A stretch of 64,000 bases of DNA. It comes from Auanema rhodensis. Lineage: Eukaryota; Animalia; Nematoda. Made by a program: the position numbers and the translations under genes. This document shows positions 508 to 52,131 of this stretch, one piece after another. The DNA is taken from NCBI GenBank assembly GCA_964057225.1, contig OZ059894.1:11656001-11720000 (forward strand). Direction: 5' to 3'. Positions within the stretch are counted from its first letter, which is position 1. The number at the start of each line of letters is the position of its first letter. The notes under the pieces are model-generated. The model was not told the DNA's origin. It saw only the letters and a list, made by a program, of their open reading frames with translations, and ran no database searches.

Positions 508-1321
508 ACAGTAAAAAGTCCAATCAAGAGAGAAATTTTTTCAACACATAGTTGTTTTTTTTTTAAATATCATTGTTTTTCCTCATAACTCGGTTTAAAC
601 TCGTTCTAACCCGTTGAAATACGTCTAGAAAGTCTTTATAACATGCATATGTATGATAGAACTTCATATTTATTGTAATAGAAAATTTTATTTTCAGACG
701 TCTTGGTTAACAATGATATGTTTTACCCCCTTATAATTTTTATCATAATGTTCCTTATACGGAACGCTCAATGAAACTTGCTTCCAGAAAAATTTCTTTC
801 TATTTTTTCTTCATATGTACGTAGATACTATAGAGAACTATGATAGAAAACTTTAACATTCACGAAATCATCATTTCTCATTACGCTACGGAGGTTTAAA
901 AAGCTGTGTTTTACCTTATAATAGACCGGAAAACCCTTGTGTTAAAACTGGACCGTTTTTACACATATAAAAATGTCCCGTATTCGGGACCCTAATGTAA
1001 CTTTTGATTCCCTATATTTTTTTTCATGAAATTTACAATCTACTGTAGAAAGAAGAATTATTTTTATAAAAACTGTAAATTTTTGAAAAATGAAAACAAA
1101 ACGAAAACAAAAACAACTTTTTTTTGAACATTTTCTCACACAAGGGTCCCCCCTTACCTACTTTTTTTCTCATTACTCGTTTCAACCTCATCCGATCACT
1201 CTGCAAACATGTTTAATCGTTCTAACTTGTTGAAATACGTCTTAAAAGTCTAAACAACATGCATATGCATAATAGAAACCACCCGAATAGGCCCCCACGC
1301 ACTAAACGAGATATATACATT

Positions 1322-1455
1322 ACCAGTATAGTAATAGAACACATATTGAAGATTAATTCGATAAGAACAATTTATTGACGTAGAGAATGTTTGTTCCGAA
1401 AAACTACAATATTAAACTATAAAAGTAACAAAAGCGTAGAGGCAGCAAAGACATG
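1322..1455 (-). mobile_element. Fossil element B junction (B 3' end + U2 nt 39-79 + first 10 nt of B), present in every unit; representative copy
   Basis: 1322-1331 = 16229-16238; 1332-1372 = U2 nt 79-39 with 5 mismatches; 1373 onward aligns with 15496 onward, fading near 1455. Confidence 0.85.
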
Positions 1456-1688
1456 AATAAACATAAATGTAAATACAGAATTACCAGGTAGTACATAAGT
1501 ATGACAAAAAATTATAAGAAAGCCATGAAAATAGAAGGTTTGTGAACAAATGAGAGGTACATCTTTGATCGTATAGTCATTTCTAAACCGTTCGTATGCT
1601 GCAGCATCGTCATAAGCGTCACTCAAGTTGAATTTCCATGTGTACTACACGATTTTCATTCTTATTGTTACATTCTTTCCCTGAGGGA

Positions 1689-1873
1689 ATGGGCCGTTCC
1701 CGCCAGCAGTGCAAGAGCGGGTCGACCCGTGAGGTGGAGCTAGCAAGCCAGCATCTACCTCAAGTCTCAAAAATCGGTTAACCTTATTGTGAACCAATGG
1801 AACACATATCGAAGGTTAATTCGATAAGAACGATTACTACACTTTGATCTTAGCCAAAAGGCCGAGAAGCGAT
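1689..1873 (-). ncRNA. U2: U2 snRNA
   Basis: ATCGCTTCTCGGCCTTTTGGCTAAGATC 5' end; GTAGTA; stem IIa TATCGAA/TTCGATA; IIc TTAACCT/AGGTTAA; Sm site GATTTTTGA; stem III; loop IV TTGCAC; 3' end approximate. Confidence 0.97.
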
Positions 1874-2982: not shown

Positions 2983-4163
2983 ACAGTAAAAAGTCCAATC
3001 AAGAGAGAAATTTTTTCAACACATAGTTGTTTTTTTTTTAAATATCATTGTTTTTCCTCATAACTCGGTTTAAACTCGTTCTAACCCGTTGAAATACGTC
3101 TAGAAAGTCTTTATAACATGCATATGTATGATAGAACTTCATATTTATTGTAATAGAAAATTTTATTTTCAGACGTCTTGGTTAACAATGATATGTTTTA
3201 CCCCCTTATAATTTTTATCATAATGTTCCTTATACGGAACGCTCAATGAAACTTGCTTCCAGAAAAATTTCTTTCTATTTTTTCTTCATATGTACGTAGA
3301 TACTATAGAGAACTATGATAGAAAACTTTAACATTCACGAAATCATCATTTCTCATTACGCTACGGAGGTTTAAAAAGCTGTGTTTTACCTTATAATAGA
3401 CCGGAAAACCCTTGTGTTAAAACTGGACCGTTTTTACACATATAAAAATGTCCCGTATTCGGGACCCTAATGTAACTTTTGATTCCCTATATTTTTTTTC
3501 ATGAAATTTACAATCTACTGTAGAAAGAAGAATTATTTTTATAAAAACTGTAAATTTTTGAAAAATGAAAACAAAACGAAAACAAAAACAACTTTTTTTT
3601 GAACATTTTCTCACACAAGGGTCCCCCCTTACCTACTTTTTTTCTCATTACTCGTTTCAACCTCATCCGATCACTCTGCAAACATGTTTAATCGTTCTAA
3701 CTTGTTGAAATACGTCTTAAAAGTCTAAACAACATGCATATGCATAATAGAAACCACCCGAATAGGCCCCCACGCACTAAACGAGATATATACATTACCA
3801 GTATAGTAATAGAACACATATTGAAGATTAATTCGATAAGAACAATTTATTGACGTAGAGAATGTTTGTTCCGAAAAACTACAATATTAAACTATAAAAG
3901 TAACAAAAGCGTAGAGGCAGCAAAGACATGAATAAACATAAATGTAAATACAGAATTACCAGGTAGTACATAAGTATGACAAAAAATTATAAGAAAGCCA
4001 TGAAAATAGAAGGTTTGTGAACAAATGAGAGGTACATCTTTGATCGTATAGTCATTTCTAAACCGTTCGTATGCTGCAGCATCGTCATAAGCGTCACTCA
4101 AGTTGAATTTCCATGTGTACTACACGATTTTCATTCTTATTGTTACATTCTTTCCCTGAGGGA

Positions 4164-5461: not shown

Positions 5462-6642
5462 ACAGTAAAAAGTCCAATCAAGAGAGAAATTTTTTCAACA
5501 CATAGTTGTTTTTTTTTTAAATATCATTGTTTTTCCTCATAACTCGGTTTAAACTCGTTCTAACCCGTTGAAATACGTCTAGAAAGTCTTTATAACATGC
5601 ATATGTATGATAGAACTTCATATTTATTGTAATAGAAAATTTTATTTTCAGACGTCTTGGTTAACAATGATATGTTTTACCCCCTTATAATTTTTATCAT
5701 AATGTTCCTTATACGGAACGCTCAATGAAACTTGCTTCCAGAAAAATTTCTTTCTATTTTTTCTTCATATGTACGTAGATACTATAGAGAACTATGATAG
5801 AAAACTTTAACATTCACGAAATCATCATTTCTCATTACGCTACGGAGGTTTAAAAAGCTGTGTTTTACCTTATAATAGACCGGAAAACCCTTGTGTTAAA
5901 ACTGGACCGTTTTTACACATATAAAAATGTCCCGTATTCGGGACCCTAATGTAACTTTTGATTCCCTATATTTTTTTTCATGAAATTTACAATCTACTGT
6001 AGAAAGAAGAATTATTTTTATAAAAACTGTAAATTTTTGAAAAATGAAAACAAAACGAAAACAAAAACAACTTTTTTTTGAACATTTTCTCACACAAGGG
6101 TCCCCCCTTACCTACTTTTTTTCTCATTACTCGTTTCAACCTCATCCGATCACTCTGCAAACATGTTTAATCGTTCTAACTTGTTGAAATACGTCTTAAA
6201 AGTCTAAACAACATGCATATGCATAATAGAAACCACCCGAATAGGCCCCCACGCACTAAACGAGATATATACATTACCAGTATAGTAATAGAACACATAT
6301 TGAAGATTAATTCGATAAGAACAATTTATTGACGTAGAGAATGTTTGTTCCGAAAAACTACAATATTAAACTATAAAAGTAACAAAAGCGTAGAGGCAGC
6401 AAAGACATGAATAAACATAAATGTAAATACAGAATTACCAGGTAGTACATAAGTATGACAAAAAATTATAAGAAAGCCATGAAAATAGAAGGTTTGTGAA
6501 CAAATGAGAGGTACATCTTTGATCGTATAGTCATTTCTAAACCGTTCGTATGCTGCAGCATCGTCATAAGCGTCACTCAAGTTGAATTTCCATGTGTACT
6601 ACACGATTTTCATTCTTATTGTTACATTCTTTCCCTGAGGGA

Positions 6643-11728: not shown

Positions 11729-14700
11729 ATGGTTTATTGAATAACTAATGTTATGATACAATAAATAACCAATAAAAAAGAGCCCAGAATCGGGGAGACG
11801 GTATTACCAGTACAACTTAAAACAGCAAGTAATTAAAAAGTACATAATAAGACACATTGCCAACAGAGGCTAAAACGACTCAAGAGTCGGGGGAGTGGGT
11901 TAAAAAAAATGAACAAAAAAATGAATATTAAAGCAGAACAATGAGAAATCAAGTGCCGCTATGATCAAACAATTTGAGTGCCTACGGCAATGATGTTAAA
12001 AATAAACAACAAAATACATGTACCAATGAAGGTCAGAAAGAAAGAAACAAAAGACAAAAATAAGTAATACAAAAAGTAAATACATTACAATCAAATCACA
12101 AACAAGTCAATTGATAATTTCTTCTTCATATTGCCTTACACCAGAAACATGTTCCACGTAGATATTCCTGGCCCACTTGATGGTATCGGCGACGACGAGC
12201 TTCTCCATTAGCCGGTTGTAGTGGCTGCTGATCTTGAGTGATCGGAGGGCTTGTCCGTTGAGCGGGTCCATAGTTCCAAGCATTCCTACGACATACGCTT
12301 CTACACTAGTCTTATAACCAAGACATTGGTATTGGCTGGCTATGTCAGCATATTTCCTCTCCTTTATCATACGCGCGGCTATCATGGCTTGACGGCGGTT
12401 TTCATAGCTCACTGTAACATCAACGATACTACAGTGTTTTGCGTCATGATCGACCACTACTATGTCAGGTCGGAGTGTACTATTAATGCCAGGAAGAGGC
12501 TGGTTAGTGTAAACTTCTCCGTTTTTAGGCTCTGGCAGGGCTTTGATAAGACGGTCCACGATGTTGTTGTGGCGGAGTTGGATTGCTCTCGTGTGAGAGT
12601 GGCAGTGTCCAAGAACATGTGCAGCAGTTTCGTTGGAGTAACTACACCTGCGGCACTGTTTGTTTCCTTCTCCGTGTCTTCTACAGCCATTGAGCTGGAG
12701 AGTATTGAGTCGAGCCTTGTGGATGAATCGCCAATCAGCAAACCGTATGAAATCTCCCTTCGCCATAAAGTGATTGGACGCTTTGTTGAGCATTGTGACA
12801 TCAAAGACTTTCCCTTGATCCGGTTTTTGAAGAAGGATCCGAAGGTCTTTCAGCCATAATGCACGTCGCAGGCTTCTGTGGCATAGTGAAGGTGTTAACA
12901 GTTGGTTGTTTAGATTGAGTTCTAAACCACTTTCGAGGCATGTCCAGTTAGCGTTGATGAGTTTCTTGAGTTGACGCATCGCTACTCTTACTCTAGTCCA
13001 GATGGAGGAAACATCAGATGTTTCGGTGTCGAAAATGCCATCAACGGAACCGTTGTAATATGCAGCTGTCTCATCGTTACTGGCTTGACGTTTAATCCTT
13101 TTTGATGCTACTTTTTTTGAGTCTTGATGCGCAATATCAGCTACTACAAGATCAGATGACTTCAAAAGTTGGTAGGCATGAGTGACTTCACAGACGTCTG
13201 ACAGGTGTTGGAGTCGAGAGAGACCAAGTCCGCCGTAGTTAGTTGGCAGGTAGATTGGTTCAGCACTGGCGTTTGGAGGATAGTGCATCCATCTACGGGC
13301 ACAGCGTTTGAGTTCTTTGTCAAAGGCGACTAGTTTACTCTTTGGGACGTGGCCATTCGTCATATGAAAATTAAGGCAGGGCATCAGGAAGGTGCGTACT
13401 GCGTCAGCTTTCTGCCATTCAGCAAGTAAGGATTTGTCAATTTTTTCCAAGTGTTGACTCATAATATTCACTGTTGGAACCGCAGACTTATGTAAATGCA
13501 TTCCAGTAGGGATTCCCAGGTGGGAGTAGCTGTCGAATTTGCTGAGAGCGGGTAGAGAGGAGCTCTGTAGCATGTATGAGGCTGTTGATATTTTCCCTTT
13601 GTCGATCGTCAAGGTGGCGCATTTCGCTGGTTTGAAGGTCAAGCCTGTGAAATTAGCCGCATTTGATGCTGCGTCCAACATTTTCTGTAGATCTTCTGAT
13701 GATGAGGAGACCAGGGCAAGGTCATCGGCGTACGCTAGCACAGCGATGTTGTGGTTGTGTAGCTTATAGCCAGTAGAGGATTCCAAGATGGTTTTAATTA
13801 GAGGTTCAATGGCAAGGTTGAACAGGATCGGAGATAGTGGGGATCCTTGTAACACACCTGCATGAACTGGAATGGTCGATGTGAGTCCGGAGCCTGTCTG
13901 GATTCTTGTAGAGGCATCTGTGTATAGAGCTCGTACTCGGGATATTGAGGCTTCAGCCACTCCTGACCATCTTAGAACGTCTAGCAGAGTTTCGTGTGGC
14001 AGCGATCCAAAAGCGTTTGCGAGATCAAGCCAAGCAATTGCAATTTTCTCACGTTTACGTTTAGCGTCCGCAATGGTACTTTGCAACATAAAGTTGTGTT
14101 CCATGCATCCAGCTTTGGCCACAAAGCCCTTTTGGGAGGGAGAAAGTCTTTTTTCTGCTCTTGCCCATGTTAGCAGTCGATGCGTAAGACAAGCTGAGTA
14201 CGTCTTACCAATTGTGCACGAAAGTGCTATTGGTCGCCAGTTGTTAATGTCAGCTTTATCACCTTTCTTATGGATGAGGACGGTGGTCGACTCTTTCCAG
14301 GAAAAAGGGATGTGTCCTAGCTTGTGTACGGTGTTAAATATCGCTGCTAATATGTGACCTCCTTGGTCAAATTTCTTCCAGTGCGAGTATCGAAGTCCAT
14401 CAGCTCCTGGAGCCGTATCGCTGCAACGTCGTATGCGTTCCCAGACTTCCAAAGGGGTGAAAACACCTTCTAATGGGTCGGTACTAGCTGGCAAATCCGG
14501 TCTGGTGACTGTGATGGGGAGGGCTGGGCCTTGACTGCTGTGAACAGAAAGGAAATGTTTTTCAACCTCTGCAGATGGTATGGTGCAGGTTTCACTTTGT
14601 TCTCCGAGCAGTTGTCGAAAGGCTTTCTTCTTGTTGGCCCTCCAGAGCTTCTGGAGCTTCATCGCCTGGGTTTTTTGGTCTTCCTCAGGTTGTGTGTGTG

Positions 14701-15437
14701 GTCGGCGCCTTTGTCGGAAGTTGGGAACTTTGATCATAATGTCAAGAGACTTTCTGATTGCGTCTACCAACTCTTCCAGGACCTGCTCGAGCTCACTTTT
14801 GCACACAACCTTTTTAATTCTATCCACCCAAGTATTTTCAGAGTTTCTATTCGGATCAGGGTCGGCAAAAAATGGTTCTGTACTCGAAACCCTGATCTCG
14901 TTGAATATTTCACTCTCTCGCGGAAGGGGGGAAACTTCGGCCTCTGGGGACAAGTCCAGAATTGGGGCCTCAAACAAGCGTACCGTTGATGGAGATCCTT
15001 GTTCCTGTCCACTGGATGATGTTTCCTCCATTGTACGCTCCTCCACGGGCGGGGTGGTCGTCCTTGTGCCTGGTGGGCGGGTGTTCCTGATCCTCCGCAA
15101 TATAGGGCGGGAACTGGGCTCTCTCGGAGATAGAGGTGAGATCACCACAGTTTCCTCTATGATGCGGAGGCATCCTTCAGCTTTTTTCTGATGGCTTTTA
15201 ACGGCCTTCAGATTGCTGGTGAGGCCACAGGCACGGCACTCAAATTCTACTCCGACCTCATGTTCTCTCCGAAGATGGCGGACGAGACCATTGTGGTCTG
15301 AGTAGGATCGCGGAATAGGAGCGCAGATTGAACAAGAAAAAGGGCTCTGAAGAGGCACCTTTAGCTTGTAAAGCCCTTGCTCCATCTCTAGCAGATCTAA
15401 AGACTTACGTAGTACAGTTGCAATATCGATTTAGCCA
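11729..15437 (-). mobile_element. Element A copy 1: near-full-length U2-targeting RLE non-LTR retrotransposon (Utopia-like, NeSL-related)
   Basis: Single ZnF-RT-RLE ORF; ~380-bp AT-rich 3' UTR ending AATAAACC; joined to U2 nt 38-end downstream and U2 nt 39-96 upstream; same orientation as U2. Confidence 0.95.
12107..15385 (-). CDS. Reverse transcriptase / restriction-like endonuclease polyprotein (1092 aa)
   Basis: N-terminal C2H2 (CSIC..H....H) and C2HC (CRAC..H..C) zinc fingers; RT motifs APGADG, WRPIAL, QKGF, WLDLANAFGS, GVLQGSPLSP, YADD, YSHLG; CCHC knuckle CRRC..ETAAHVLGHC; RHN; RLE core RPD..DVT..E..KERKY; C-terminal IYVEHVSGVRQY. Confidence 0.97.
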   Translation of the reverse strand: MEQGLYKLKVPLQSPFSCSICAPIPRSYSDHNGLVRHLRREHEVGVEFECRACGLTSNLKAVKSHQKKAEGCLRIIEETVVISPLSPREPSSRPILRRIRNTRPPGTRTTTPPVEERTMEETSSSGQEQGSPSTVRLFEAPILDLSPEAEVSPLPRESEIFNEIRVSSTEPFFADPDPNRNSENTWVDRIKKVVCKSELEQVLEELVDAIRKSLDIMIKVPNFRQRRRPHTQPEEDQKTQAMKLQKLWRANKKKAFRQLLGEQSETCTIPSAEVEKHFLSVHSSQGPALPITVTRPDLPASTDPLEGVFTPLEVWERIRRCSDTAPGADGLRYSHWKKFDQGGHILAAIFNTVHKLGHIPFSWKESTTVLIHKKGDKADINNWRPIALSCTIGKTYSACLTHRLLTWARAEKRLSPSQKGFVAKAGCMEHNFMLQSTIADAKRKREKIAIAWLDLANAFGSLPHETLLDVLRWSGVAEASISRVRALYTDASTRIQTGSGLTSTIPVHAGVLQGSPLSPILFNLAIEPLIKTILESSTGYKLHNHNIAVLAYADDLALVSSSSEDLQKMLDAASNAANFTGLTFKPAKCATLTIDKGKISTASYMLQSSSLPALSKFDSYSHLGIPTGMHLHKSAVPTVNIMSQHLEKIDKSLLAEWQKADAVRTFLMPCLNFHMTNGHVPKSKLVAFDKELKRCARRWMHYPPNASAEPIYLPTNYGGLGLSRLQHLSDVCEVTHAYQLLKSSDLVVADIAHQDSKKVASKRIKRQASNDETAAYYNGSVDGIFDTETSDVSSIWTRVRVAMRQLKKLINANWTCLESGLELNLNNQLLTPSLCHRSLRRALWLKDLRILLQKPDQGKVFDVTMLNKASNHFMAKGDFIRFADWRFIHKARLNTLQLNGCRRHGEGNKQCRRCSYSNETAAHVLGHCHSHTRAIQLRHNNIVDRLIKALPEPKNGEVYTNQPLPGINSTLRPDIVVVDHDAKHCSIVDVTVSYENRRQAMIAARMIKERKYADIASQYQCLGYKTSVEAYVVGMLGTMDPLNGQALRSLKISSHYNRLMEKLVVADTIKWARNIYVEHVSGVRQYEEEIIN

Positions 15438-15495: not shown

Positions 15496-16238
15496 TATTG
15501 ACGTAGAGAATGTTTGTCCCGGAGGACTACAATTTAAAAAAATAATTACTGAAGCCGGAAGGCAGCGAGAAATAAAATGGATACTACCTGCACTGAGTGC
15601 GTCGTATCAAAAAAAAAAAGAGAATGATAGTCTTAAAGAAGAGAACAGCACATAAAGAAAAGTAGAACTTCCATCTGATGCTACGGGTTTAGAGGAATAG
15701 CTTATGTCAGATATCGGTTAAACATAAATGATTAGGGCAATTGCGGAACAAGGATAGTGTAATTAACATTGTTTACAGAGTTCAGGTTCTGAAGCTACGG
15801 ATAAAGAAGGGTTAGCTTGACAGATTGAAGTTAAAATGAACAACGTGGCATATTTCAGTACAGCACAATAGTAATAGCGAGACTACGGAAAAAAAAAAAA
15901 AGCTCTGTTCTGGTCCTGGAACGGCGGCTTCGACGTCTTCTGGGTGCCACTGCGGTTTGAAGGGTCAGCTAGCTTAACAGTAGAACGGCGGCAAGGCGGA
16001 ACAGGAGAAGAACATCGACGATCCTCCGGCTCGGCTGTCATAGTGTGCGACTTCTTGTTCATAATGGTAGCGGTGTCCTCGTGCTTCTTCTTTCTCCACA
16101 AAAATTACTACACTATCTGAGCGGGAGAAGCCACAGATAACATAGGACCGCCTCAAGGCCTGGTAGATCAACCAGTGTTGCTTCAATCACCAAGTATTGC
16201 GGCCTGGGCCCTTGGATCAATTCACAACACCAGTATAG
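15496..16238 (-). mobile_element. Element B: ~743-bp non-autonomous element inserted at the same U2 site
   Basis: No RT or endonuclease ORF; 3' end CGTCAATA joined to U2 nt 39; 5' end CTATACTGGT joined to U2 nt 79; both termini recur, decayed, in every array unit. Confidence 0.8.
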
Positions 16239-22392: not shown

Positions 22393-23573
22393 ACAGTAAA
22401 AAGTCCAATCAAGAGAGAAATTTTTTCAACACATAGTTGTTTTTTTTTTAAATATCATTGTTTTTCCTCATAACTCGGTTTAAACTCGTTCTAACCCGTT
22501 GAAATACGTCTAGAAAGTCTTTATAACATGCATATGTATGATAGAACTTCATATTTATTGTAATAGAAAATTTTATTTTCAGACGTCTTGGTTAACAATG
22601 ATATGTTTTACCCCCTTATAATTTTTATCATAATGTTCCTTATACGGAACGCTCAATGAAACTTGCTTCCAGAAAAATTTCTTTCTATTTTTTCTTCATA
22701 TGTACGTAGATACTATAGAGAACTATGATAGAAAACTTTAACATTCACGAAATCATCATTTCTCATTACGCTACGGAGGTTTAAAAAGCTGTGTTTTACC
22801 TTATAATAGACCGGAAAACCCTTGTGTTAAAACTGGACCGTTTTTACACATATAAAAATGTCCCGTATTCGGGACCCTAATGTAACTTTTGATTCCCTAT
22901 ATTTTTTTTCATGAAATTTACAATCTACTGTAGAAAGAAGAATTATTTTTATAAAAACTGTAAATTTTTGAAAAATGAAAACAAAACGAAAACAAAAACA
23001 ACTTTTTTTTGAACATTTTCTCACACAAGGGTCCCCCCTTACCTACTTTTTTTCTCATTACTCGTTTCAACCTCATCCGATCACTCTGCAAACATGTTTA
23101 ATCGTTCTAACTTGTTGAAATACGTCTTAAAAGTCTAAACAACATGCATATGCATAATAGAAACCACCCGAATAGGCCCCCACGCACTAAACGAGATATA
23201 TACATTACCAGTATAGTAATAGAACACATATTGAAGATTAATTCGATAAGAACAATTTATTGACGTAGAGAATGTTTGTTCCGAAAAACTACAATATTAA
23301 ACTATAGAAGTAACAAAAGCGTAGAGGCAGCAAAGACATGAATAAACATAAATGTAAATACAGAATTACCAGGTAGTACATAAGTATGACAAAAAATTAT
23401 AAGAAAGCCATGAAAATAGAAGGTTTGTGAACAAATGAGAGGTACATCTTTGATCGTATAGTCATTTCTAAACCGTTCGTATGCTGCAGCATCGTCATAA
23501 GCGTCACTCAAGTTGAATTTCCATGTGTACTACACGATTTTCATTCTTATTGTTACATTCTTTCCCTGAGGGA

Positions 23574-42219: not shown

Positions 42220-43400
42220 ACAGTAAAAAGTCCAATCAAGAGAGAAATTTTTTCAACACATAGTTGTTTTTTTTTTAAATATCATTGTTTTTCCTCATAA
42301 CTCGGTTTAAACTCGTTCTAACCCGTTGAAATACGTCTAGAAAGTCTTTATAACATGCATATGTATGATAGAACTTCATATTTATTGTAATAGAAAATTT
42401 TATTTTCAGACGTCTTGGTTAACAATGATATGTTTTACCCCCTTATAATTTTTATCATAATGTTCCTTATACGGAACGCTCAATGAAACTTGCTTCCAGA
42501 AAAATTTCTTTCTATTTTTTCTTCATATGTACGTAGATACTATAGAGAACTATGATAGAAAACTTTAACATTCACGAAATCATCATTTCTCATTACGCTA
42601 CGGAGGTTTAAAAAGCTGTGTTTTACCTTATAATAGACCGGAAAACCCTTGTGTTAAAACTGGACCGTTTTTACACATATAAAAATGTCCCGTATTCGGG
42701 ACCCTAATGTAACTTTTGATTCCCTATATTTTTTTTCATGAAATTTACAATCTACTGTAGAAAGAAGAATTATTTTTATAAAAACTGTAAATTTTTGAAA
42801 AATGAAAACAAAACGAAAACAAAAACAACTTTTTTTTGAACATTTTCTCACACAAGGGTCCCCCCTTACCTACTTTTTTTCTCATTACTCGTTTCAACCT
42901 CATCCGATCACTCTGCAAACATGTTTAATCGTTCTAACTTGTTGAAATACGTCTTAAAAGTCTAAACAACATGCATATGCATAATAGAAACCACCCGAAT
43001 AGGCCCCCACGCACTAAACGAGATATATACATTACCAGTATAGTAATAGAACACATATTGAAGATTAATTCGATAAGAACAATTTATTGACGTAGAGAAT
43101 GTTTGTTCCGAAAAACTACAATATTAAACTATAAAAGTAACAAAAGCGTAGAGGCAGCAAAGACATGAATAAACATAAATGTAAATACAGAATTACCAGG
43201 TAGTACATAAGTATGACAAAAAATTATAAGAAAGCCATGAAAATAGAAGGTTTGTGAACAAATGAGAGGTACATCTTTGATCGTATAGTCATTTCTAAAC
43301 CGTTCGTATGCTGCAGCATCGTCATAAGCGTCACTCAAGTTGAATTTCCATGTGTACTACACGATTTTCATTCTTATTGTTACATTCTTTCCCTGAGGGA

Positions 43401-43585
43401 ATGGGCCGTTCCCGCCAGCAGTGCAAGAGCGGGTCGACCCGTGAGGTGGAGCTAGCAAGCCAGCATCTACCTCAAGTCTCAAAAATCGGTTAACCTTATT
43501 GTGAACCAATGGAACACATATCGAAGGTTAATTCGATAAGAACGATTACTACACTTTGATCTTAGCCAAAAGGCCGAGAAGCGAT
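43401..43585 (-). ncRNA. U2: U2 snRNA
   Basis: Copy of 1689-1873. Confidence 0.97.
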
Positions 43586-44027
43586 ACAGCATAGCCATGA
43601 GTATCAAAGACATCAAGCAAATGTATCGTACTTGTTACGAGTGCACTCTCTCATTTGAATATAAAAGTGTGGTTTGACAATCTTGACTGTACAGGTCATA
43701 AATGGCTCATATAAACTGTGGATTTACTCAACTTTTGGACTTATTTTTTTCTTATTCGAAGCGCTGCACTTTTTTCTATTCTTTTTATTCAAATACTTGT
43801 ATATAGTTTTATATGTACGGTTGCAAAGTTTCCGAATATTTTATATATTTTTATACAATAATTAGGAGAAGGTTAATACAATGAAATCTCCCAACTTTAC
43901 AGTGTTTGTATTGCTTACAGTATCTAGAACAACCACTCTTGTAATATTAGAGCACATATCAATCAACAACTTTTTCTAGTTATCAAAGCTTTTTTATTTC
44001 TTCAAGATATTTCAAATAAAATATAAA

Positions 44028-44146
44028 AGCTTACGACACCCGGGATTCCCAAGCCGTCTCCGATCCAAGTACTAACCGGGCCCAACGTTGCTTGACTTGC
44101 CAGATCGGACGGGATGGCGTACTTTCAACGTGGTATGGTCGTAAGC
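44028..44146 (-). rRNA. 5S rRNA
   Basis: Copy of 201-319. Confidence 0.98.
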
Positions 44147-44387
44147 AATGTTATATTCTTCATTATCAGTTATATCACTCTAAATCTTGTTGTTAATAGT
44201 TAGGACCACAAAGAAAACAACAGGAACAGTAACAAATGAAATGCCCAAACTTTACAGTGTTCGAGTTATTTACAGTATCTAAGACTACCTCTGTCGTGTT
44301 ATTAGAGCAAACATTCGATTAACAACAACTTTTTTTTAGTTATCAAAGCTTTTTTATTTCTTCAAAAAATTTCAAATAAAATATAAA

Positions 44388-44506
44388 AGCTTACGACACC
44401 CGGGATTCCCAAGCCGTCTCCGATCCAAGTACTAACCGGGCCCAACGTTGCTTGACTTGCCAGATCGGACGGGATGGCGTACTTTCAACGTGGTATGGTC
44501 GTAAGC
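44388..44506 (-). rRNA. 5S rRNA
   Basis: Copy of 201-319. Confidence 0.98.
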
Positions 44507-44648
44507 AATGTCATATTCTTCATTATCAGTTATATCACTCTAAATCTTGTTGTTAATAGATACGACCACAAAGAAAACAACAGGAACAGTAACAATAACA
44601 AAAAAAATTTTTTTTTCACCTATGTGTCTAAAGGTTAGCCATGTATCC

Positions 44649-44702
<54 letters not shown>

Positions 44703-45834
44703 TTTTTTTTAAATATCATTGTTTTTCCTCATAACTCGGTTTAAACTCGTTCTAACCCGTTGAAATACGTCTAGAAAGTCTTTATAACATGCATATGTAT
44801 GATAGAACTTCATATTTATTGTAATAGAAAATTTTATTTTCAGACGTCTTGGTTAACAATGATATGTTTTACCCCCTTATAATTTTTATCATAATGTTCC
44901 TTATACGGAACGCTCAATGAAACTTGCTTCCAGAAAAATTTCTTTCTATTTTTTCTTCATATGTACGTAGATACTATAGAGAACTATGATAGAAAACTTT
45001 AACATTCACGAAATCATCATTTCTCATTACGCTACGGAGGTTTAAAAAGCTGTGTTTTACCTTATAATAGACCGGAAAACCCTTGTGTTAAAACTGGACC
45101 GTTTTTACACATATAAAAATGTCCCGTATTCGGGACCCTAATGTAACTTTTGATTCCCTATATTTTTTTTCATGAAATTTACAATCTACTGTAGAAAGAA
45201 GAATTATTTTTATAAAAACTGTAAATTTTTGAAAAATGAAAACAAAACGAAAACAAAAACAACTTTTTTTTGAACATTTTCTCACACAAGGGTCCCCCCT
45301 TACCTACTTTTTTTTTCATTACTCGTTTCAACCTCATCCGATCACTCTGCAAACATGTTTAATCGTTCTAACTTGTTGAAATACGTCTTAAAAGTCTAAA
45401 CAACATGCATATGCATAATAGAAACCACCCGAATAGGCCCCCACGCACTAAACGAGATATATACATTACCAGTATAGTAATAGAACACATATTGAAGATT
45501 AATTCGATAAGAACAATTTATTGACGTAGAGAATGTTTGTTCCGAAAAACTACAATATTAAACTATAAAAGTAACAAAAGCGTAGAGGCAGCAAAGACAT
45601 GAATAAACATAAATGTAAATACAGAATTACCAGGTAGTACATAAGTATGACAAAAAATTATAAGAAAGCCATGAAAATAGAAGGTTTGTGAACAAATGAG
45701 AGGTACATCTTTGATCGTATAGTCATTTCTAAACCGTTCGTATGCTGCAGCATCGTCATAAGCGTCACTCAAGTTGAATTTCCATGTGTACTACACGATT
45801 TTCATTCTTATTGTTACATTCTTTCCCTGAGGGA

Positions 45835-46088
45835 ATGGGCCGTTCCCGCCAGCAGTGCAAGAGCGGGTCGACCCGTGAGGTGGAGCTAGCAAGCCAGCAT
45901 CTACCTCAAGTCTCAAAAATCGGTTAACATTATTGTGAACCAATGGAACACATATCGAAGGTTAATTCGATAAGAACGATTAATGGTTTATTGAATAACT
46001 AATGTTATGAAACAATAAATAACCAATAAAAAAGAGCCCAGAATCGGGGAGACGCACTTTGATCTTAGCCAAAAGGCCGAGAAGCGAT
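45835..46088 (-). pseudogene. U2: U2 gene disrupted by 72-bp element A stub
   Basis: Branch-point recognition sequence split; additional substitution at 45929 in the stem IIc strand. Confidence 0.93.
45983..46054 (-). mobile_element. Element A copy 3: 72-bp 3'-terminal stub (extreme 5' truncation) with 3-bp target deletion
   Basis: Matches 11729-11800 except one substitution; unit is 69 bp longer; replaces U2 nt 35-37. Confidence 0.95.
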
Positions 46089-46530
46089 ACAGCATAGCCA
46101 TGAGTATCAAAGACATCAAGCAAATGTATCGTACTTGTTACGAGTGCACTCTCTCATTTGAATATAAAAGTGTGGTTTGACAATCTTGACTGTACAGGTC
46201 ATAAATGGCTCATATAAACTGTGGATTTACTCAACTTTTGGACTTATTTTTTTCTTATTCGAAGCGCTGCACTTTTTTCTATTCTTTTTATTCAAATACT
46301 TGTATATAGTTTTATATGTACGGTTGCAAAGTTTCCGAATATTTTATATATTTTTATACAATAATTAGGAGAAGGTTAATACAATGAAATCTCCCAACTT
46401 TACAGTGTTTGTATTGCTTACAGTATCTAGAACAACCACTCTTGTAATATTAGAGCACATATCAATCAACAACTTTTTCTAGTTATCAAAGCTTTTTTAT
46501 TTCTTCAAGATATTTCAAATAAAATATAAA

Positions 46531-46649
46531 AGCTTACGACACCCGGGATTCCCAAGCCGTCTCCGATCCAAGTACTAACCGGGCCCAACGTTGCTTGACT
46601 TGCCAGATCGGACGGGATGGCGTACTTTCAACGTGGTATGGTCGTAAGC
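46531..46649 (-). rRNA. 5S rRNA
   Basis: Copy of 201-319; unit with three 5S. Confidence 0.98.
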
Positions 46650-46890
46650 AATGTTATATTCTTCATTATCAGTTATATCACTCTAAATCTTGTTGTTAAT
46701 AGTTAGGACCACAAAGAAAACAACAGGAACAGTAACAAATGAAATGCCCAAACTTTACAGTGTTCGAGTTATTTACAGTATCTAAGACTACCTCTGTCGT
46801 GTTATTAGAGCAAACATTCGATTAACAACAACTTTTTTTTAGTTATCAAAGCTTTTTTATTTCTTCAAAAAATTTCAAATAAAATATAAA

Positions 46891-47009
46891 AGCTTACGAC
46901 ACCCGGGATTCCCAAGCCGTCTCCGATCCAAGTACTAACCGGGCCCAACGTTGCTTGACTTGCCAGATCGGACGGGATGGCGTACTTTCAACGTGGTATG
47001 GTCGTAAGC
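46891..47009 (-). rRNA. 5S rRNA
   Basis: Copy of 201-319; unit with three 5S. Confidence 0.98.
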
Positions 47010-47250
47010 AATGTCATATTCTTCATTATCAGTTATATCACTCTAAATCTTGTTGTTAATAGATACGACCACAAAGAAAACAACAGGAACAGTAACAAAT
47101 GAAATGCCCAAACTTTACAGTGTTCGAGTTATTTACAGTATCTAAGACTACCTCTGTCGTGTTATTAGAGCAAACATTCGATTAACAACAACTTTTTTTT
47201 AGTTATCAAAGCTTTTTTATTTCTTCAAAAAATTTCAAATAAAATATAAA

Positions 47251-47369
47251 AGCTTACGACACCCGGGATTCCCAAGCCGTCTCCGATCCAAGTACTAACC
47301 GGGCCCAACGTTGCTTGACTTGCCAGATCGGACGGGATGGCGTACTTTCAACGTGGTATGGTCGTAAGC
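47251..47369 (-). rRNA. 5S rRNA
   Basis: Copy of 201-319; unit with three 5S. Confidence 0.98.
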
Positions 47370-47511
47370 AATGTCATATTCTTCATTATCAGTTATATCA
47401 CTCTAAATCTTGTTGTTAATAGATACGACCACAAAGAAAACAACAGGAACAGTAACAATAACAAAAAAAATTTTTTTTTCACCTATGTGTCTAAAGGTTA
47501 GCCATGTATCC

Positions 47512-48896: not shown

Positions 48897-51800
48897 GGTT
48901 TATTGAATAACTAATGTTATGATACAATAAATAACCAATAAAAAAGAGCCCAGAATCGGGGAGACGGTATTACCAGTACAACTTAAAACAGCAAGTAATT
49001 AAAAAGTACATAATAAGACACATTGCCAACAGAGGCTAAAACGACTCAAGAGTCGGGGGAGTGGGTTAAAAAAAATGAACAAAAAAATGAATATTAAAGC
49101 AGAACAATGAGAAATCAAGTGCCGCTATGATCAAACAATTTGAGTGCCTACGGCAATGATGTTAAAAATAAACAACAAAATACATGTACCAATGAAGGTC
49201 AGAAAGAAAGAAACAAAAGACAAAAATAAGTAATACAAAAAGTAAATACATTACAATCAAATCACAAACAAGTCAATTGATAATTTCTTCTTCATATTGC
49301 CTTACACCAGAAACATGTTCCACGTAGATATTCCTGGCCCACTTGATGGTATCGGCGACGACGAGCTTCTCCATTAGCCGGTTGTAGTGGCTGCTGATCT
49401 TGAGTGATCGGAGGGCTTGTCCGTTGAGCGGGTCCATAGTTCCAAGCATTCCTACGACATATGCTTCTACACTAGTCTTATAACCAAGACATTGGTATTG
49501 GCTGGCTATGTCAGCATATTTCCTCTCCTTTATCATACGCGCGGCTATCATGGCTTGACGGCGGTTTTCATAGCTCACTGTAACATCAACGATACTACAG
49601 TGTTTTGCGTCATGATCGACCACTACTATGTCAGGTCGGAGTGTACTATTAATGCCAGGAAGAGGCTGGTTAGTGTAAACTTCTCCGTTTTTAGGCTCTG
49701 GCAGGGCTTTGATAAGACGGTCCACGATGTTGTTGTGGCGGAGTTGGATTGCTCTCGTGTGAGAGTGGCAGTGTCCAAGAACATGTGCAGCAGTTTCGTT
49801 GGAGTAACTACACCTGCGGCACTGTTTGTTTCCTTCTCCGTGTCTTCTACAGCCATTGAGCTGGAGAGTATTGAGTCGAGCCTTGTGGATGAATCGCCAA
49901 TCAGCAAACCGTATGAAATCTCCCTTCGCCATAAAGTGATTGGACGCTTTGTTGAGCATTGTGACATCAAAGACTTTCCCTTGATCCGGTTTTTGAAGAA
50001 GGATCCGAAGGTCTTTCAGCCATAATGCACGTCGCAGGCTTCTGTGGCATAGTGAAGGTGTTAACAGTTGGTTGTTTAGATTGAGTTCTAAACCACTTTC
50101 GAGGCATGTCCAGTTAGCGTTGATGAGTTTCTTGAGTTGACGCATCGCTACTCTTACTCTAGTCCAGATGGAGGAAACATCAGATGTTTCGGTGTCGAAA
50201 ATGCCATCAACGGAACCGTTGTAATATGCAGCTGTCTCATCGTTACTGGCTTGACGTTTAATCCTTTTTGATGCTACTTTTTTTGAGTCTTGATGCGCAA
50301 TATCAGCTACTACAAGATCAGATGACTTCAAAAGTTGGTAGGCATGAGTGACTTCACAGACGTCTGACAGGTGTTGGAGTCGAGAGAGACCAAGTCCGCC
50401 GTAGTTAGTTGGCAGGTAGATTGGTTCAGCACTGGCGTTTGGAGGATAGTGCATCCATCTACGGGCACAGCGTTTGAGTTCTTTGTCAAAGGCGACTAGT
50501 TTACTCTTTGGGACGTGGCCATTCGTCATATGAAAATTAAGGCAGGGCATCAGGAAGGTGCGTACTGCGTCAGCTTTCTGCCATTCAGCAAGTAAGGATT
50601 TGTCAATTTTTTCCAAGTGTTGACTCATAATATTCACTGTTGGAACCGCAGACTTATGTAAATGCATTCCAGTAGGGATTCCCAGGTGGGAGTAGCTGTC
50701 GAATTTGCTGAGAGCGGGTAGAGAGGAGCTCTGTAGCATGTATGAGGCTGTTGATATTTTCCCTTTGTCGATCGTCAAGGTGGCGCATTTCGCTGGTTTG
50801 AAGGTCAAGCCTGTGAAATTAGCCGCATTTGATGCTGCGTCCAACATTTTCTGTAGATCTTCTGATGATGAGGAGACCAGGGCAAGGTCATCGGCGTACG
50901 CTAGCACAGCGATGTTGTGGTTGTGTAGCTTATAGCCAGTAGAGGATTCCAAGATGGTTTTAATTAGAGGTTCAATGGCAAGGTTGAACAGGATCGGAGA
51001 TAGTGGGGATCCTTGTAACACACCTGCATGAACTGGAATGGTCGATGTGAGTCCGGAGCCTGTCTGGATTCTTGTAGAGGCATCTGTGTATAGAGCTCGT
51101 ACTCGGGATATTGAGGCTTCAGCCACTCCTGACCATCTTAGAACGTCTAGCAGAGTTTCGTGTGGCAGCGATCCAAAAGCGTTTGCGAGATCAAGCCAAG
51201 CAATTGCAATTTTCTCACGTTTACGTTTAGCGTCCGCAATGGTACTTTGCAACATAAAGTTGTGTTCCATGCATCCAGCTTTGGCCACAAAGCCCTTTTG
51301 GGAGGGAGAAAGTCTTTTTTCTGCTCTTGCCCATGTTAGCAGTCGATGCGTAAGACAAGCTGAGTACGTCTTACCAATTGTGCACGAAAGTGCTATTGGT
51401 CGCCAGTTGTTAATGTCAGCTTTATCACCTTTCTTATGGATGAGGACGGTGGTCGACTCTTTCCAGGAAAAAGGGATGTGTCCTAGCTTGTGTACGGTGT
51501 TAAATATCGCTGCTAATATGTGACCTCCTTGGTCAAATTTCTTCCAGTGCGAGTATCGAAGTCCATCAGCTCCTGGAGCCGTATCGCTGCAACGTCGTAT
51601 GCGTTCCCAGACTTCCAAAGGGGTGAAAACACCTTCTAATGGGTCGGTACTAGCTGGCAAATCCGGTCTGGTGACTGTGATGGGGAGGGCTGGGCCTTGA
51701 CTGCTGTGAACAGAAAGGAAATGTTTTTCAACCTTTGCAGATGGTATGGTGCAGGTTTCACTTTGTTCTCCGAGCAGTTGTCGAAAGGCTTTCTTCTTGT

Positions 51801-52131
51801 TGGCCCTCCAGAGCTTCTGGAGCTTCATCGCCTGGGTTTTTTGGTCTTCCTCAGGTTGTGTGTGTGGTCGGCGCCTTTGTCGGAAGTTGGGAACTTTGAT
51901 CATAATGTCAAGAGACTTTCTGATTGCGTCTACCAACTCTTCCAGGACCTGCTCGAGCTCACTTTTGCACACAACCTTTTTAATTCTATCCACCCAAGTA
52001 TTTTCAGAGTTTCTATTCGGATCAGGGTCGGCAAAAAATGGTTCTGTACTCGAAACCCTGATCTCGTTGAATATTTCACTCTCTCGCGGAAGGGGGGAAA
52101 CTTCGGCCTCTGGGGACAAGTCCAGAATTGG
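48897..52131 (-). mobile_element. Element A copy 2: 5'-truncated (3.2 kb)
   Basis: Near-identical to copy 1 from the 3' end to ...CCCAATTCTGG; flanked by U2 nt 1-110 upstream and nt 36-end downstream. Confidence 0.95.
49273..52119 (-). CDS. 5'-truncated RT/RLE ORF lacking the N-terminal zinc fingers (predicted start is an internal TTG)
   Basis: Matches aa 145-1092 of the copy 1 protein except one E->K (TIPSAEV/TIPSAKV). Confidence 0.85.
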   Translation of the reverse strand: MSPEAEVSPLPRESEIFNEIRVSSTEPFFADPDPNRNSENTWVDRIKKVVCKSELEQVLEELVDAIRKSLDIMIKVPNFRQRRRPHTQPEEDQKTQAMKLQKLWRANKKKAFRQLLGEQSETCTIPSAKVEKHFLSVHSSQGPALPITVTRPDLPASTDPLEGVFTPLEVWERIRRCSDTAPGADGLRYSHWKKFDQGGHILAAIFNTVHKLGHIPFSWKESTTVLIHKKGDKADINNWRPIALSCTIGKTYSACLTHRLLTWARAEKRLSPSQKGFVAKAGCMEHNFMLQSTIADAKRKREKIAIAWLDLANAFGSLPHETLLDVLRWSGVAEASISRVRALYTDASTRIQTGSGLTSTIPVHAGVLQGSPLSPILFNLAIEPLIKTILESSTGYKLHNHNIAVLAYADDLALVSSSSEDLQKMLDAASNAANFTGLTFKPAKCATLTIDKGKISTASYMLQSSSLPALSKFDSYSHLGIPTGMHLHKSAVPTVNIMSQHLEKIDKSLLAEWQKADAVRTFLMPCLNFHMTNGHVPKSKLVAFDKELKRCARRWMHYPPNASAEPIYLPTNYGGLGLSRLQHLSDVCEVTHAYQLLKSSDLVVADIAHQDSKKVASKRIKRQASNDETAAYYNGSVDGIFDTETSDVSSIWTRVRVAMRQLKKLINANWTCLESGLELNLNNQLLTPSLCHRSLRRALWLKDLRILLQKPDQGKVFDVTMLNKASNHFMAKGDFIRFADWRFIHKARLNTLQLNGCRRHGEGNKQCRRCSYSNETAAHVLGHCHSHTRAIQLRHNNIVDRLIKALPEPKNGEVYTNQPLPGINSTLRPDIVVVDHDAKHCSIVDVTVSYENRRQAMIAARMIKERKYADIASQYQCLGYKTSVEAYVVGMLGTMDPLNGQALRSLKISSHYNRLMEKLVVADTIKWARNIYVEHVSGVRQYEEEIIN

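What the first reader, a model, noticed from the sequence alone, without database searches (positions are those of the whole stretch)
1322..1455. Every array unit carries a fixed fossil of a head-to-tail element B junction
Seen (minus strand): B 3' end (...ACAAACATTCTCTACGTCAATA), then U2 nt 39-79 with 5 mismatches in 41, then CTATACTGGT, the first 10 nt of B. Both junctions are at the same nucleotides as in the young B insertion at 15496 and 16238. Inference: an ancient tandem B-B insertion was spread through the whole array by concerted evolution. B is therefore old and independent of element A. The fossil lies ~300 bp downstream of each U2 and might be neutral, or might serve as a decoy binding site or read-through small-RNA source against B.
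Basis: partly seen in the sequence, partly recalled or inferred. Interest (0 to 1): 0.8.

Follow-up and report, generated by a model that had tools for sequence, protein, structure and literature searches.

The report
Retrotransposon scar fixed in U2 array spacer
Every repeat of this nematode's U2 snRNA/5S rRNA gene array carries, just downstream of U2, a decayed 274-base scar of two stacked U2-specific retrotransposons; it looks like a neutral relic copied through the whole array, useful as a historical record rather than as a working part.

Summary
On the minus strand, window 1455-1322 reads: element tail, then U2 nt 39-79 (5/41 mismatches, all GC>AT transitions), then CTATACTGGT. Both junctions match those of the live element B at 15496/16238.

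Two corrections:
- The relic is longer, 1595-1322 (274 nt).
- Its tail part (1595-1373) is not B-type. It matches the 3' UTR of a second autonomous Utopia-like retrotransposon, "C". C is a single copy genome-wide with one in-frame stop. Identity is 77% over ~224 nt, against 64% for B tails.

So the relic is a C-type tail | U2 39-79 | B-type head junction: a heterotypic stack, not B-B. Live stacks of the same build exist in the array.

All 22 units in the window carry it, 21 of them identical. So do 50 of the 51 U2 genes in the 264 kb I hold. Genome-wide there are about 404-410 copies against 444 U2 3' halves.

The relic has its own GC>AT changes at sites where all live elements agree, so the direction was element to spacer, not capture by B. 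B's head and the C-type tail module are old, and the tail is unrelated to A's.

I found no sign of function: none of the 50 relics examined is interrupted, and the genome holds no relic-tail/pristine-U2 chimera. RNA and protein binding are untested. Other agents of this scan described the live elements and their stacking in this genome; none described this relic.

The parts
1684..1873 (-). Intact U2 snRNA gene of the unit that carries the relic
   Evidence: Rfam RF00004, 148 bits, full length
1596..1683 (-). 88-nt U2 3' flank between the gene and the relic; no similarity to U2 or to any element
   Evidence: Local alignments against U2, A, C and four B-type families, none with z>4
1373..1595 (-).
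   Evidence: 77% identity over 224 nt to L037:1685-1908 (element C), against 64% to B and B2 tails. It shares with C a CTT..TATAG block that B tails lack
1332..1372 (-). U2 nt 39-79 fragment, the target piece that is duplicated at every B-type insertion
   Evidence: 36/41 identical to the U2 gene; all 5 changes are GC>AT transitions
1322..1331 (-). First 10 nt (CTATACTGGT) of the B-type head, joined to U2 nt 79 as in all live B, B2 and B' copies
   Evidence: Exact match at the exact junction. Similarity to B stops after it, and the rest of the spacer matches no element
15496..16238 (-). Live element B (743 bp, non-coding), the comparison copy, inserted between U2 nt 79 and nt 39
   Evidence: two more copies at ~100% identity (742 bp) elsewhere in the array
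11729..15437 (-). Element A, an autonomous Utopia-like retrotransposon (1092-aa ORF with RT) on which B is stacked. Its 3' tail is unrelated to the relic
3797..4070 (-). Next copy of the relic. Further copies start at 6276, 8737, 11214, 18247, 20726, 23207, 25676, 28172, 30649, 33124, 35605, 38066, 40559, 43034, 45468, 48380, 54169, 56642, 59107 and 61601
   Evidence: Exact string search; 21 of 22 are identical over 274 nt and the copy at 23207 has one substitution

Best explanation
The 274-nt stretch (window 1595-1322, minus strand) is a non-functional scar of an old stack of two U2-site-specific retroelements.

How stacks form. Elements of this group are copied into U2 at nt 38|39. B-type elements always leave U2 nt 1-79 upstream of themselves, so an occupied gene still offers an intact target, and a second element can land upstream of the first.

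What happened here (inferred). A 5'-truncated copy of a C-type element, or a derivative carrying C's 3' UTR, landed upstream of a B-type element. That gave C-tail | U2 39-79 | B-head. Its 5' end was joined 88 nt past the 3' end of an intact U2. In a tandem array that equals either a ~240-bp target duplication or a unit-sized deletion. A later deletion removed B from nt 11 onwards, together with the dead U2 remnant.

The resulting unit (working U2 + scar + spacer + two 5S genes) then replaced all others by unequal exchange and gene conversion. It has since collected about 11% substitutions, mostly GC>AT.

Shown: the composition, junctions, fixation and decay direction of the scar, and live examples of each step. 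Inferred: the order of events and neutrality.
For: 1. Anatomy and junctions.
2. The tail part is C-type: 77% over 224 nt to C, against 64% for B and B2 and 58-59% for the 865-bp family, with indels shared with C.
3. C is a true autonomous element: 3938 bp, RT domain, 48-59% amino-acid identity to A including the CCHC and PD..D/E..K endonuclease region. It sits in U2 with U2 nt 39 at its 3' end.
4. Live stacks have the same build. Example: U2(1-96)-A-U2(38-79)-865-bp element-U2(39-79)-B2-U2(39-190). In the window: U2(1-79)-B-U2(39-97)-A-U2(38-190).
5. A live analogue of the left edge exists: intact U2 + ~41-51 nt of flank | 1109-bp 5'-truncated A | U2 38-190, at G000:C1:11023643-11025134. Other A 5' junctions lie ~1.1 kb past U2.
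6. Direction of decay. In the U2 piece, where the ancestral state is known, 5/5 changes are GC>AT. In the last ~75 nt of the tail the relic has 8 private changes (5 GC>AT) at sites where C and four B-type tail sequences agree, whereas C has 2.
7. Fixation.
8. Precedent for element relics fixed in a U2 array: the human RNU2 6.1-kb unit holds five Alu and one LTR (PMC3795722). Tandem Utopia insertions in U2 are reported in Nasonia (PMC4640811).
Against: - The path from stack to spacer needs at least two rearrangements, and none can be reconstructed without an outgroup.
- Only 10 nt of the B head survive.
- C-versus-relic differences are roughly symmetric (21 GC>AT against 15 AT>GC), as expected if both diverged, so that comparison alone does not give direction.
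- Perfect conservation among copies says nothing about constraint, because the whole unit is ~99.8% homogeneous.
- Neutrality is therefore assumed, not shown.
Confidence: 0.8

Rival explanations
1. One reading: a homotypic tandem B-B insertion. The upstream partner was a B-type non-autonomous element, and its junction was homogenised through the array.
For: The last 22 nt before the U2 piece are identical to young B, and B-type elements do stack head to tail. An extinct B subfamily carrying a longer C-like 3' region cannot be excluded, because only 40 of 442 candidate matches were scored.
Against: Upstream of the last ~75 nt, the relic follows C and not any of the four B-type families sampled: 77% against 58-64% identity. 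The conserved B block GATACGACGCACTCAGTGC is absent, and a C-specific block is present. C's final 17 nt are also identical to the relic's.
Confidence: 0.1
2. Reverse direction: the tail module of B and C was captured from the array spacer (for example by read-through or recombination), so the 'fossil' is the source, not a relic.
For: Every insertion lies ~450 bp upstream of a spacer copy, so recombination or read-through is physically possible. Young B and C share the relic's diagnostic ..CATTCTCTACGTCAATA end, while B2 and B' differ at two sites.
Against: Capture would not explain why the spacer copy is followed by U2 nt 39-79 starting and ending at the exact insertion junctions, then by the B head. 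The relic has private GC>AT changes at sites invariant in element lineages whose interiors are only 68% alike. No relic-tail/pristine-U2 chimera exists in the genome. C's tail is 23% diverged from the relic, so there was no recent exchange.
Confidence: 0.03
3. The relic is kept because it works. Either U2 read-through RNA carrying it feeds small-RNA silencing of C/B-type elements, or it titrates their protein (decoy).
For: It sits 88 nt downstream of a highly transcribed gene, in sense orientation. It keeps exact runs of 28, 22 and 17 nt shared with C and 25 nt shared with young B. The matching autonomous family C is down to one broken copy, while A, which has no relic, is found at some 30 or more places in the array.
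Against: There is no RNA or binding data. The decay pattern (11%, GC>AT biased, also in the U2 piece) is what neutral DNA would show. B-type elements sharing the tail end are still numerous, and three young B copies are essentially identical. The relic is not an integration target. Fixation is explained by array homogenisation alone.
Confidence: 0.07

Closest known systems
Utopia, the U2 snRNA gene-specific non-LTR retrotransposons with a restriction-like endonuclease (Kojima & Jurka 2015, PMC4640811)
   Same: Elements A and C encode RT plus a C-terminal CCHC/PD..D/E..K endonuclease region. Both sit in U2 with the downstream U2 starting at nt 38/39, the Utopia site. The 5' junctions vary. Tandem insertions in U2 are reported for Utopia-1_NVit. 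Utopia families are reported from nematodes.
   Different: The paper reports 0-20 bp target duplications or deletions. Here B-type elements always duplicate nt 39-79, and A shows 60, 75 and ~194 bp duplications and longer. As far as I read it (the Results through the RT phylogeny), the paper describes no relic of a stack junction fixed in an array spacer. The non-coding B-type riders were not searched for in its text.
Transposable-element relics fixed in every unit of the primate RNU2 (U2 snRNA) tandem array
   Same: A U2 tandem array whose every unit carries the same dead element pieces: five Alu and one LTR in the human 6.1-kb unit (PMC3795722, citing Pavelitz et al. 1995). Their spread by concerted evolution rests on my own knowledge of that literature, not on the text read here.
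   Different: Those are generalist elements inserted in the spacer. Here the relic comes from the array's own site-specific parasites, and it includes a piece of the target gene displaced into the spacer.
Tandem R1/R2-type insertions separated by short rDNA target pieces (Drosophila rDNA; from my own knowledge, not checked here)
   Same: Site-specific non-LTR elements stacked head to tail with a short target segment between them.
   Different: Different target gene and element clade, and those are not reported as a scar fixed in every functional unit.

Membership tests
Utopia (for the source elements A and C) | Insertion at the specific U2 site, with downstream U2 starting at nt ~39 | tested here: met
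   C and all B-type tails are followed by U2 from nt 39; A by nt 36-38
Utopia (for the source elements A and C) | A single ORF with N-terminal zinc fingers, RT, and a C-terminal zinc finger plus restriction-like endonuclease | tested here: met
   RVT_1 at E = 3e-28 and 3e-30. The C2H2-like N-terminus, the CX2CX8HX4C motif and RPD...D.(T/V)V.YE...K are visible in the A/C alignment. C's ORF is split by one stop.
Utopia (for the source elements A and C) | RT phylogeny places the element within the Utopia/NeSL clade | not tested
   No named Utopia reference was compared. The best database relatives (50-53% identity) are unnamed or 'hypothetical' proteins, among them nematode ones (Diploscapter, Plectus).
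Head-to-tail stack junction of U2-site elements | Order is tail | U2 nt 39-79 | head, with both junctions at the nucleotides used by live insertions | tested here: met
   A live junction of the same build is seen.
   The tail part is C-type over ~223 nt, while the head is B-type
Element relic fixed in a tandem gene array by concerted evolution | Same relic at the same position in essentially all units, with between-unit divergence far below relic-to-source divergence | tested here: met
   22/22 and 50/51 units; 404-410 genome copies; units ~99.8% alike, against ~11% private decay of the relic
Small-RNA source or decoy against transposons (piRNA-cluster-like trap) | Small RNAs or protein binding arising from the relic | not testable with these tools
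   No expression or binding data are available. Only exact shared runs of 17-28 nt with C and B could be noted.

The most novel reading that the evidence does not exclude
The scar is a heritable 'memory' of the C/B-type lineage. It sits 88 nt downstream of about 440 strongly transcribed U2 genes, so it would be read through and converted by nematode RNA-dependent RNA polymerases into antisense small RNAs. These would silence elements carrying the C-type 3' end. That would explain why C is reduced to one broken copy while A, which has no matching scar, thrives. The founder unit would then have swept the array because it carried this protection.
Probability: 0.06. Interest if true: 0.7.

Novelty: new member of a known kind. 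Interest (0 to 1): 0.35.

Why it matters
- The relic implies that the present ~440-copy U2/5S array descends from one founder unit that had been hit by its own site-specific parasites and kept a working U2.
- It gives a relative clock: about 11% private decay of the scar, against ~0.2% between units.
- It shows that the C-type 3' module and the B-type head already existed at that time.
- It points to C, not the abundant A, as the historical partner of the non-coding B-type riders.
- It also documents that insertions of these elements can rearrange the array at unit scale.

For transposon and concerted-evolution specialists this is a neat natural record. It is not a new mechanism.

Tried and rejected
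1. Fetching the whole 1.3-Mb array.
2. Sister-species test. Two exact-pattern scans of metagenome contigs, one for the relic/insertion junction and one for the species-specific U2 stretch, found nothing. The closest protein relatives are only 50-53% identical. The one contig I could read (L051) is GC-rich, ends inside the 3' UTR and has no U2. The other gave no DNA.
3. The idea that the sequence after U2 nt 79 is a second, 5'-truncated C-type copy (CTAT-CTGGTAA.. resembles an internal C 3' UTR motif). The alignment is not significant (z = 2.0), so the exact 10-nt B head at the B-specific junction is kept.
4. Search for more element or U2 debris elsewhere in the unit: none with z>4.
5. GC>AT asymmetry between C and the relic as a direction test: inconclusive (21 against 15). 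It was replaced by a count of private changes at sites invariant among the elements.
6. A fuzzy-regex scan timed out and was replaced by fixed-offset comparison.

Full report
**Setting.** The window is a head-to-tail array of 2475-bp units, all on the minus strand. Each unit has one U2 snRNA gene and two 5S rRNA genes (Rfam; unit map). Units are about 99.8% identical. The window is G000:C1:11656001-11720000. Matches to array sequence run from about 10.91 to 12.26 Mb of that contig, and the genome holds 444 U2 3' halves. I did not test this, though among the named protein relatives of the elements the closest are from nematodes.

Three units in the window are interrupted inside U2.
- At 11729-15437 lies element A, with a 1092-aa ORF and an RT domain.
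- At 48897-52131 lies a 5'-truncated A.
- At 45983-46054 lies a 72-bp A remnant.
- At 15496-16238 lies the 743-bp non-coding element B, stacked upstream of the first A: U2(1-79)-B-U2(39-97)-A-U2(38-190).

The site, U2 nt 38|39, is the site of the Utopia retrotransposons (PMC4640811).

**The observation.** On the minus strand the spacer reads as follows:
- The last 22 nt of B, exactly, at 1394-1373.
- U2 nt 39-79 at 1372-1332, with 5 mismatches in 41.
- CTATACTGGT at 1331-1322, which is the first 10 nt of B.

Both junctions fall at the same nucleotides as in the live B. The same U2-79|CTATACTGGT junction is found in every B-type copy fetched from the genome, including subfamilies only 68% identical inside. 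A junction model aligned to the spacer scores 322, against 54 +/- 6 for shuffles.

All 22 U2 genes in the window have the relic at a fixed offset, and 21 are identical over 274 nt. In the 264 kb I hold, 50 of 51 U2 genes have it. The exception is a rearranged unit. Genome-wide, the 60-nt junction core occurs 404 times and its two neighbouring 60-mers 410 and 402 times.

**What the tail really is.** A unit at the edge of the array carries a second autonomous element. I call it C (L037:1685-5622, minus strand; G000:C1:10961685-10965622).
- It is 3938 bp long. Its 5' junction is at U2 nt 89 and its 3' junction at nt 39.
- Its ORF is split by one in-frame stop into 820 + 273 aa.
- It has an RT domain and is 48-59% identical to A in protein, including the CCHC and PD..D/E..K endonuclease region.
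- It is the only copy in the genome. All other RT-bearing matches are A-like at 63-66% nucleotide identity.

The last ~224 nt of C's 511-nt 3' UTR align with the spacer from 1595 to 1373 at 77% identity and run straight into the U2 39-79 piece. B-type tails reach only 58-64% over that span. They share only the last ~75-85 nt, lack a block that C and the relic share, and carry a conserved block that both lack. A's tail is unrelated.

The relic is therefore 274 nt long (1595-1322), begins 88 nt after U2, and is a C-type tail | U2 39-79 | B-type head junction. Nothing else in the unit resembles U2 or any element.

**Direction and age.** In the U2 piece the ancestral state is known, and all 5 changes are GC>AT transitions. 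In the last ~75 nt of the tail, the relic has 8 private changes (5 GC>AT, 2 AT>GC, 1 G>C) at sites where C and four B-type tail sequences agree. C has 2 private changes. The relic is thus a decaying side branch of a conserved element module, with about 11% private change (13 changes in ~116 sites).

Capture of the spacer by the elements would not explain the U2 piece or the head. No relic-tail/pristine-U2 chimera exists in the genome.

**How it got there (inferred).** Live stacks of the same build occur in the array. One example is U2(1-96)-A-U2(38-79)-865-bp element-U2(39-79)-B2-U2(39-190). B-type insertions keep U2 nt 1-79 upstream, so the target is regenerated.

The relic's left edge (intact U2, short flank, truncated element tail, U2 from nt 39) also has a live analogue. 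At G000:C1:11023643-11025134, an intact U2 plus ~41-51 nt of flank is joined to a 1109-bp 5'-truncated A, followed by U2 38-190. Other A 5' junctions lie ~1.1 kb past U2.

The simplest path has three steps:
1. A 5'-truncated C-type copy inserts into the U2 head of a B-occupied gene, with its 5' end joined 88 nt past an intact U2.
2. B is deleted from nt 11 onwards, together with the dead U2 remnant.
3. The new unit spreads through the array.

The order and number of events cannot be proven without an outgroup.

**Function.** I found no evidence for one.
- Identity among copies is uninformative, because the whole unit is homogenised.
- The relic is not an insertion site: the counts of its three parts agree, and none of the 50 relics I examined is interrupted.
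- It has not been converted by real U2, nor mobilised into U2.
- It does keep exact runs of 17-28 nt shared with C and 25 nt shared with young B, and it lies in sense orientation 88 nt downstream of U2. A small-RNA role therefore cannot be excluded, but it is only a possibility.

**Comparison and verdict.** Element relics fixed in every unit of a U2 array are known: the human RNU2 unit carries five Alu and one LTR (PMC3795722). Tandem Utopia insertions in U2 are also known (PMC4640811). What is particular here is that the relic comes from the array's own site-specific parasites and carries a displaced piece of the target gene. It also records a nearly extinct autonomous lineage (C), whose 3' module is the one used by the abundant non-coding B-type riders.

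It is not B-B, and function is unsupported. Earlier agents of this scan described the live elements and their stacking in this genome.

Noticed in passing
L037:1685-5622 (G000:C1:10961685-10965622), minus strand: A second autonomous Utopia-like family, C: 3938 bp, an ORF of 820 + 273 aa split by one in-frame stop, and 48-59% amino-acid identity to A. It is a single copy in the genome, yet its 3' end is the one shared by all B-type non-coding elements. This suggests C (or its lineage), not A, was their partner. It also raises the question of what mobilises the three essentially identical young B copies now.
   Followed up: partly
G000:C1:11023643-11025134 (in L043); also unit position 1351 junctions at G000:C1:10960408, 10989991, 11003815 and 11012672: Element A 5' junctions can lie far outside U2: about 41-51 nt, and about 1.1 kb, past the U2 3' end. 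In a tandem array this equals very long target duplications (~194 bp, ~1.3 kb) or unit-scale deletions, and it creates variant units without 5S genes. Within U2, the A 5' junctions seen are nt 34, 96/97 and 110.
   Followed up: partly
G000:C1:~11063767-11069228 (L047): A triple stack in one U2 gene: U2(1-96)-A(full length)-U2(38-79)-865-bp non-coding element-U2(39-79)-B2-U2(39-190). The 865-bp family has a different first 11 nt from the B head.
   Followed up: partly
G000:C1:11940000-11981000 (loci L007-L019): B2-occupied U2 units recur at spacings of ~3310 and ~2945 bp. This suggests a unit with a disrupted U2 was itself amplified into a sub-array by unequal exchange.
   Followed up: no
window 46383-47458 and 43396-45829: One unit has three 5S copies instead of two. 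Another lacks unit positions 1298-1339, next to the (TA)n microsatellite, whose length differs between units (13.5-31.5 repeats).
   Followed up: no
window 590-660 versus 1190-1260 (unit, minus orientation, 597-663 versus 1213-1281): A 69-nt internal duplication (84% identity) within the spacer. It hints that part of the spacer downstream of the relic derives from 5S-proximal spacer.
   Followed up: no
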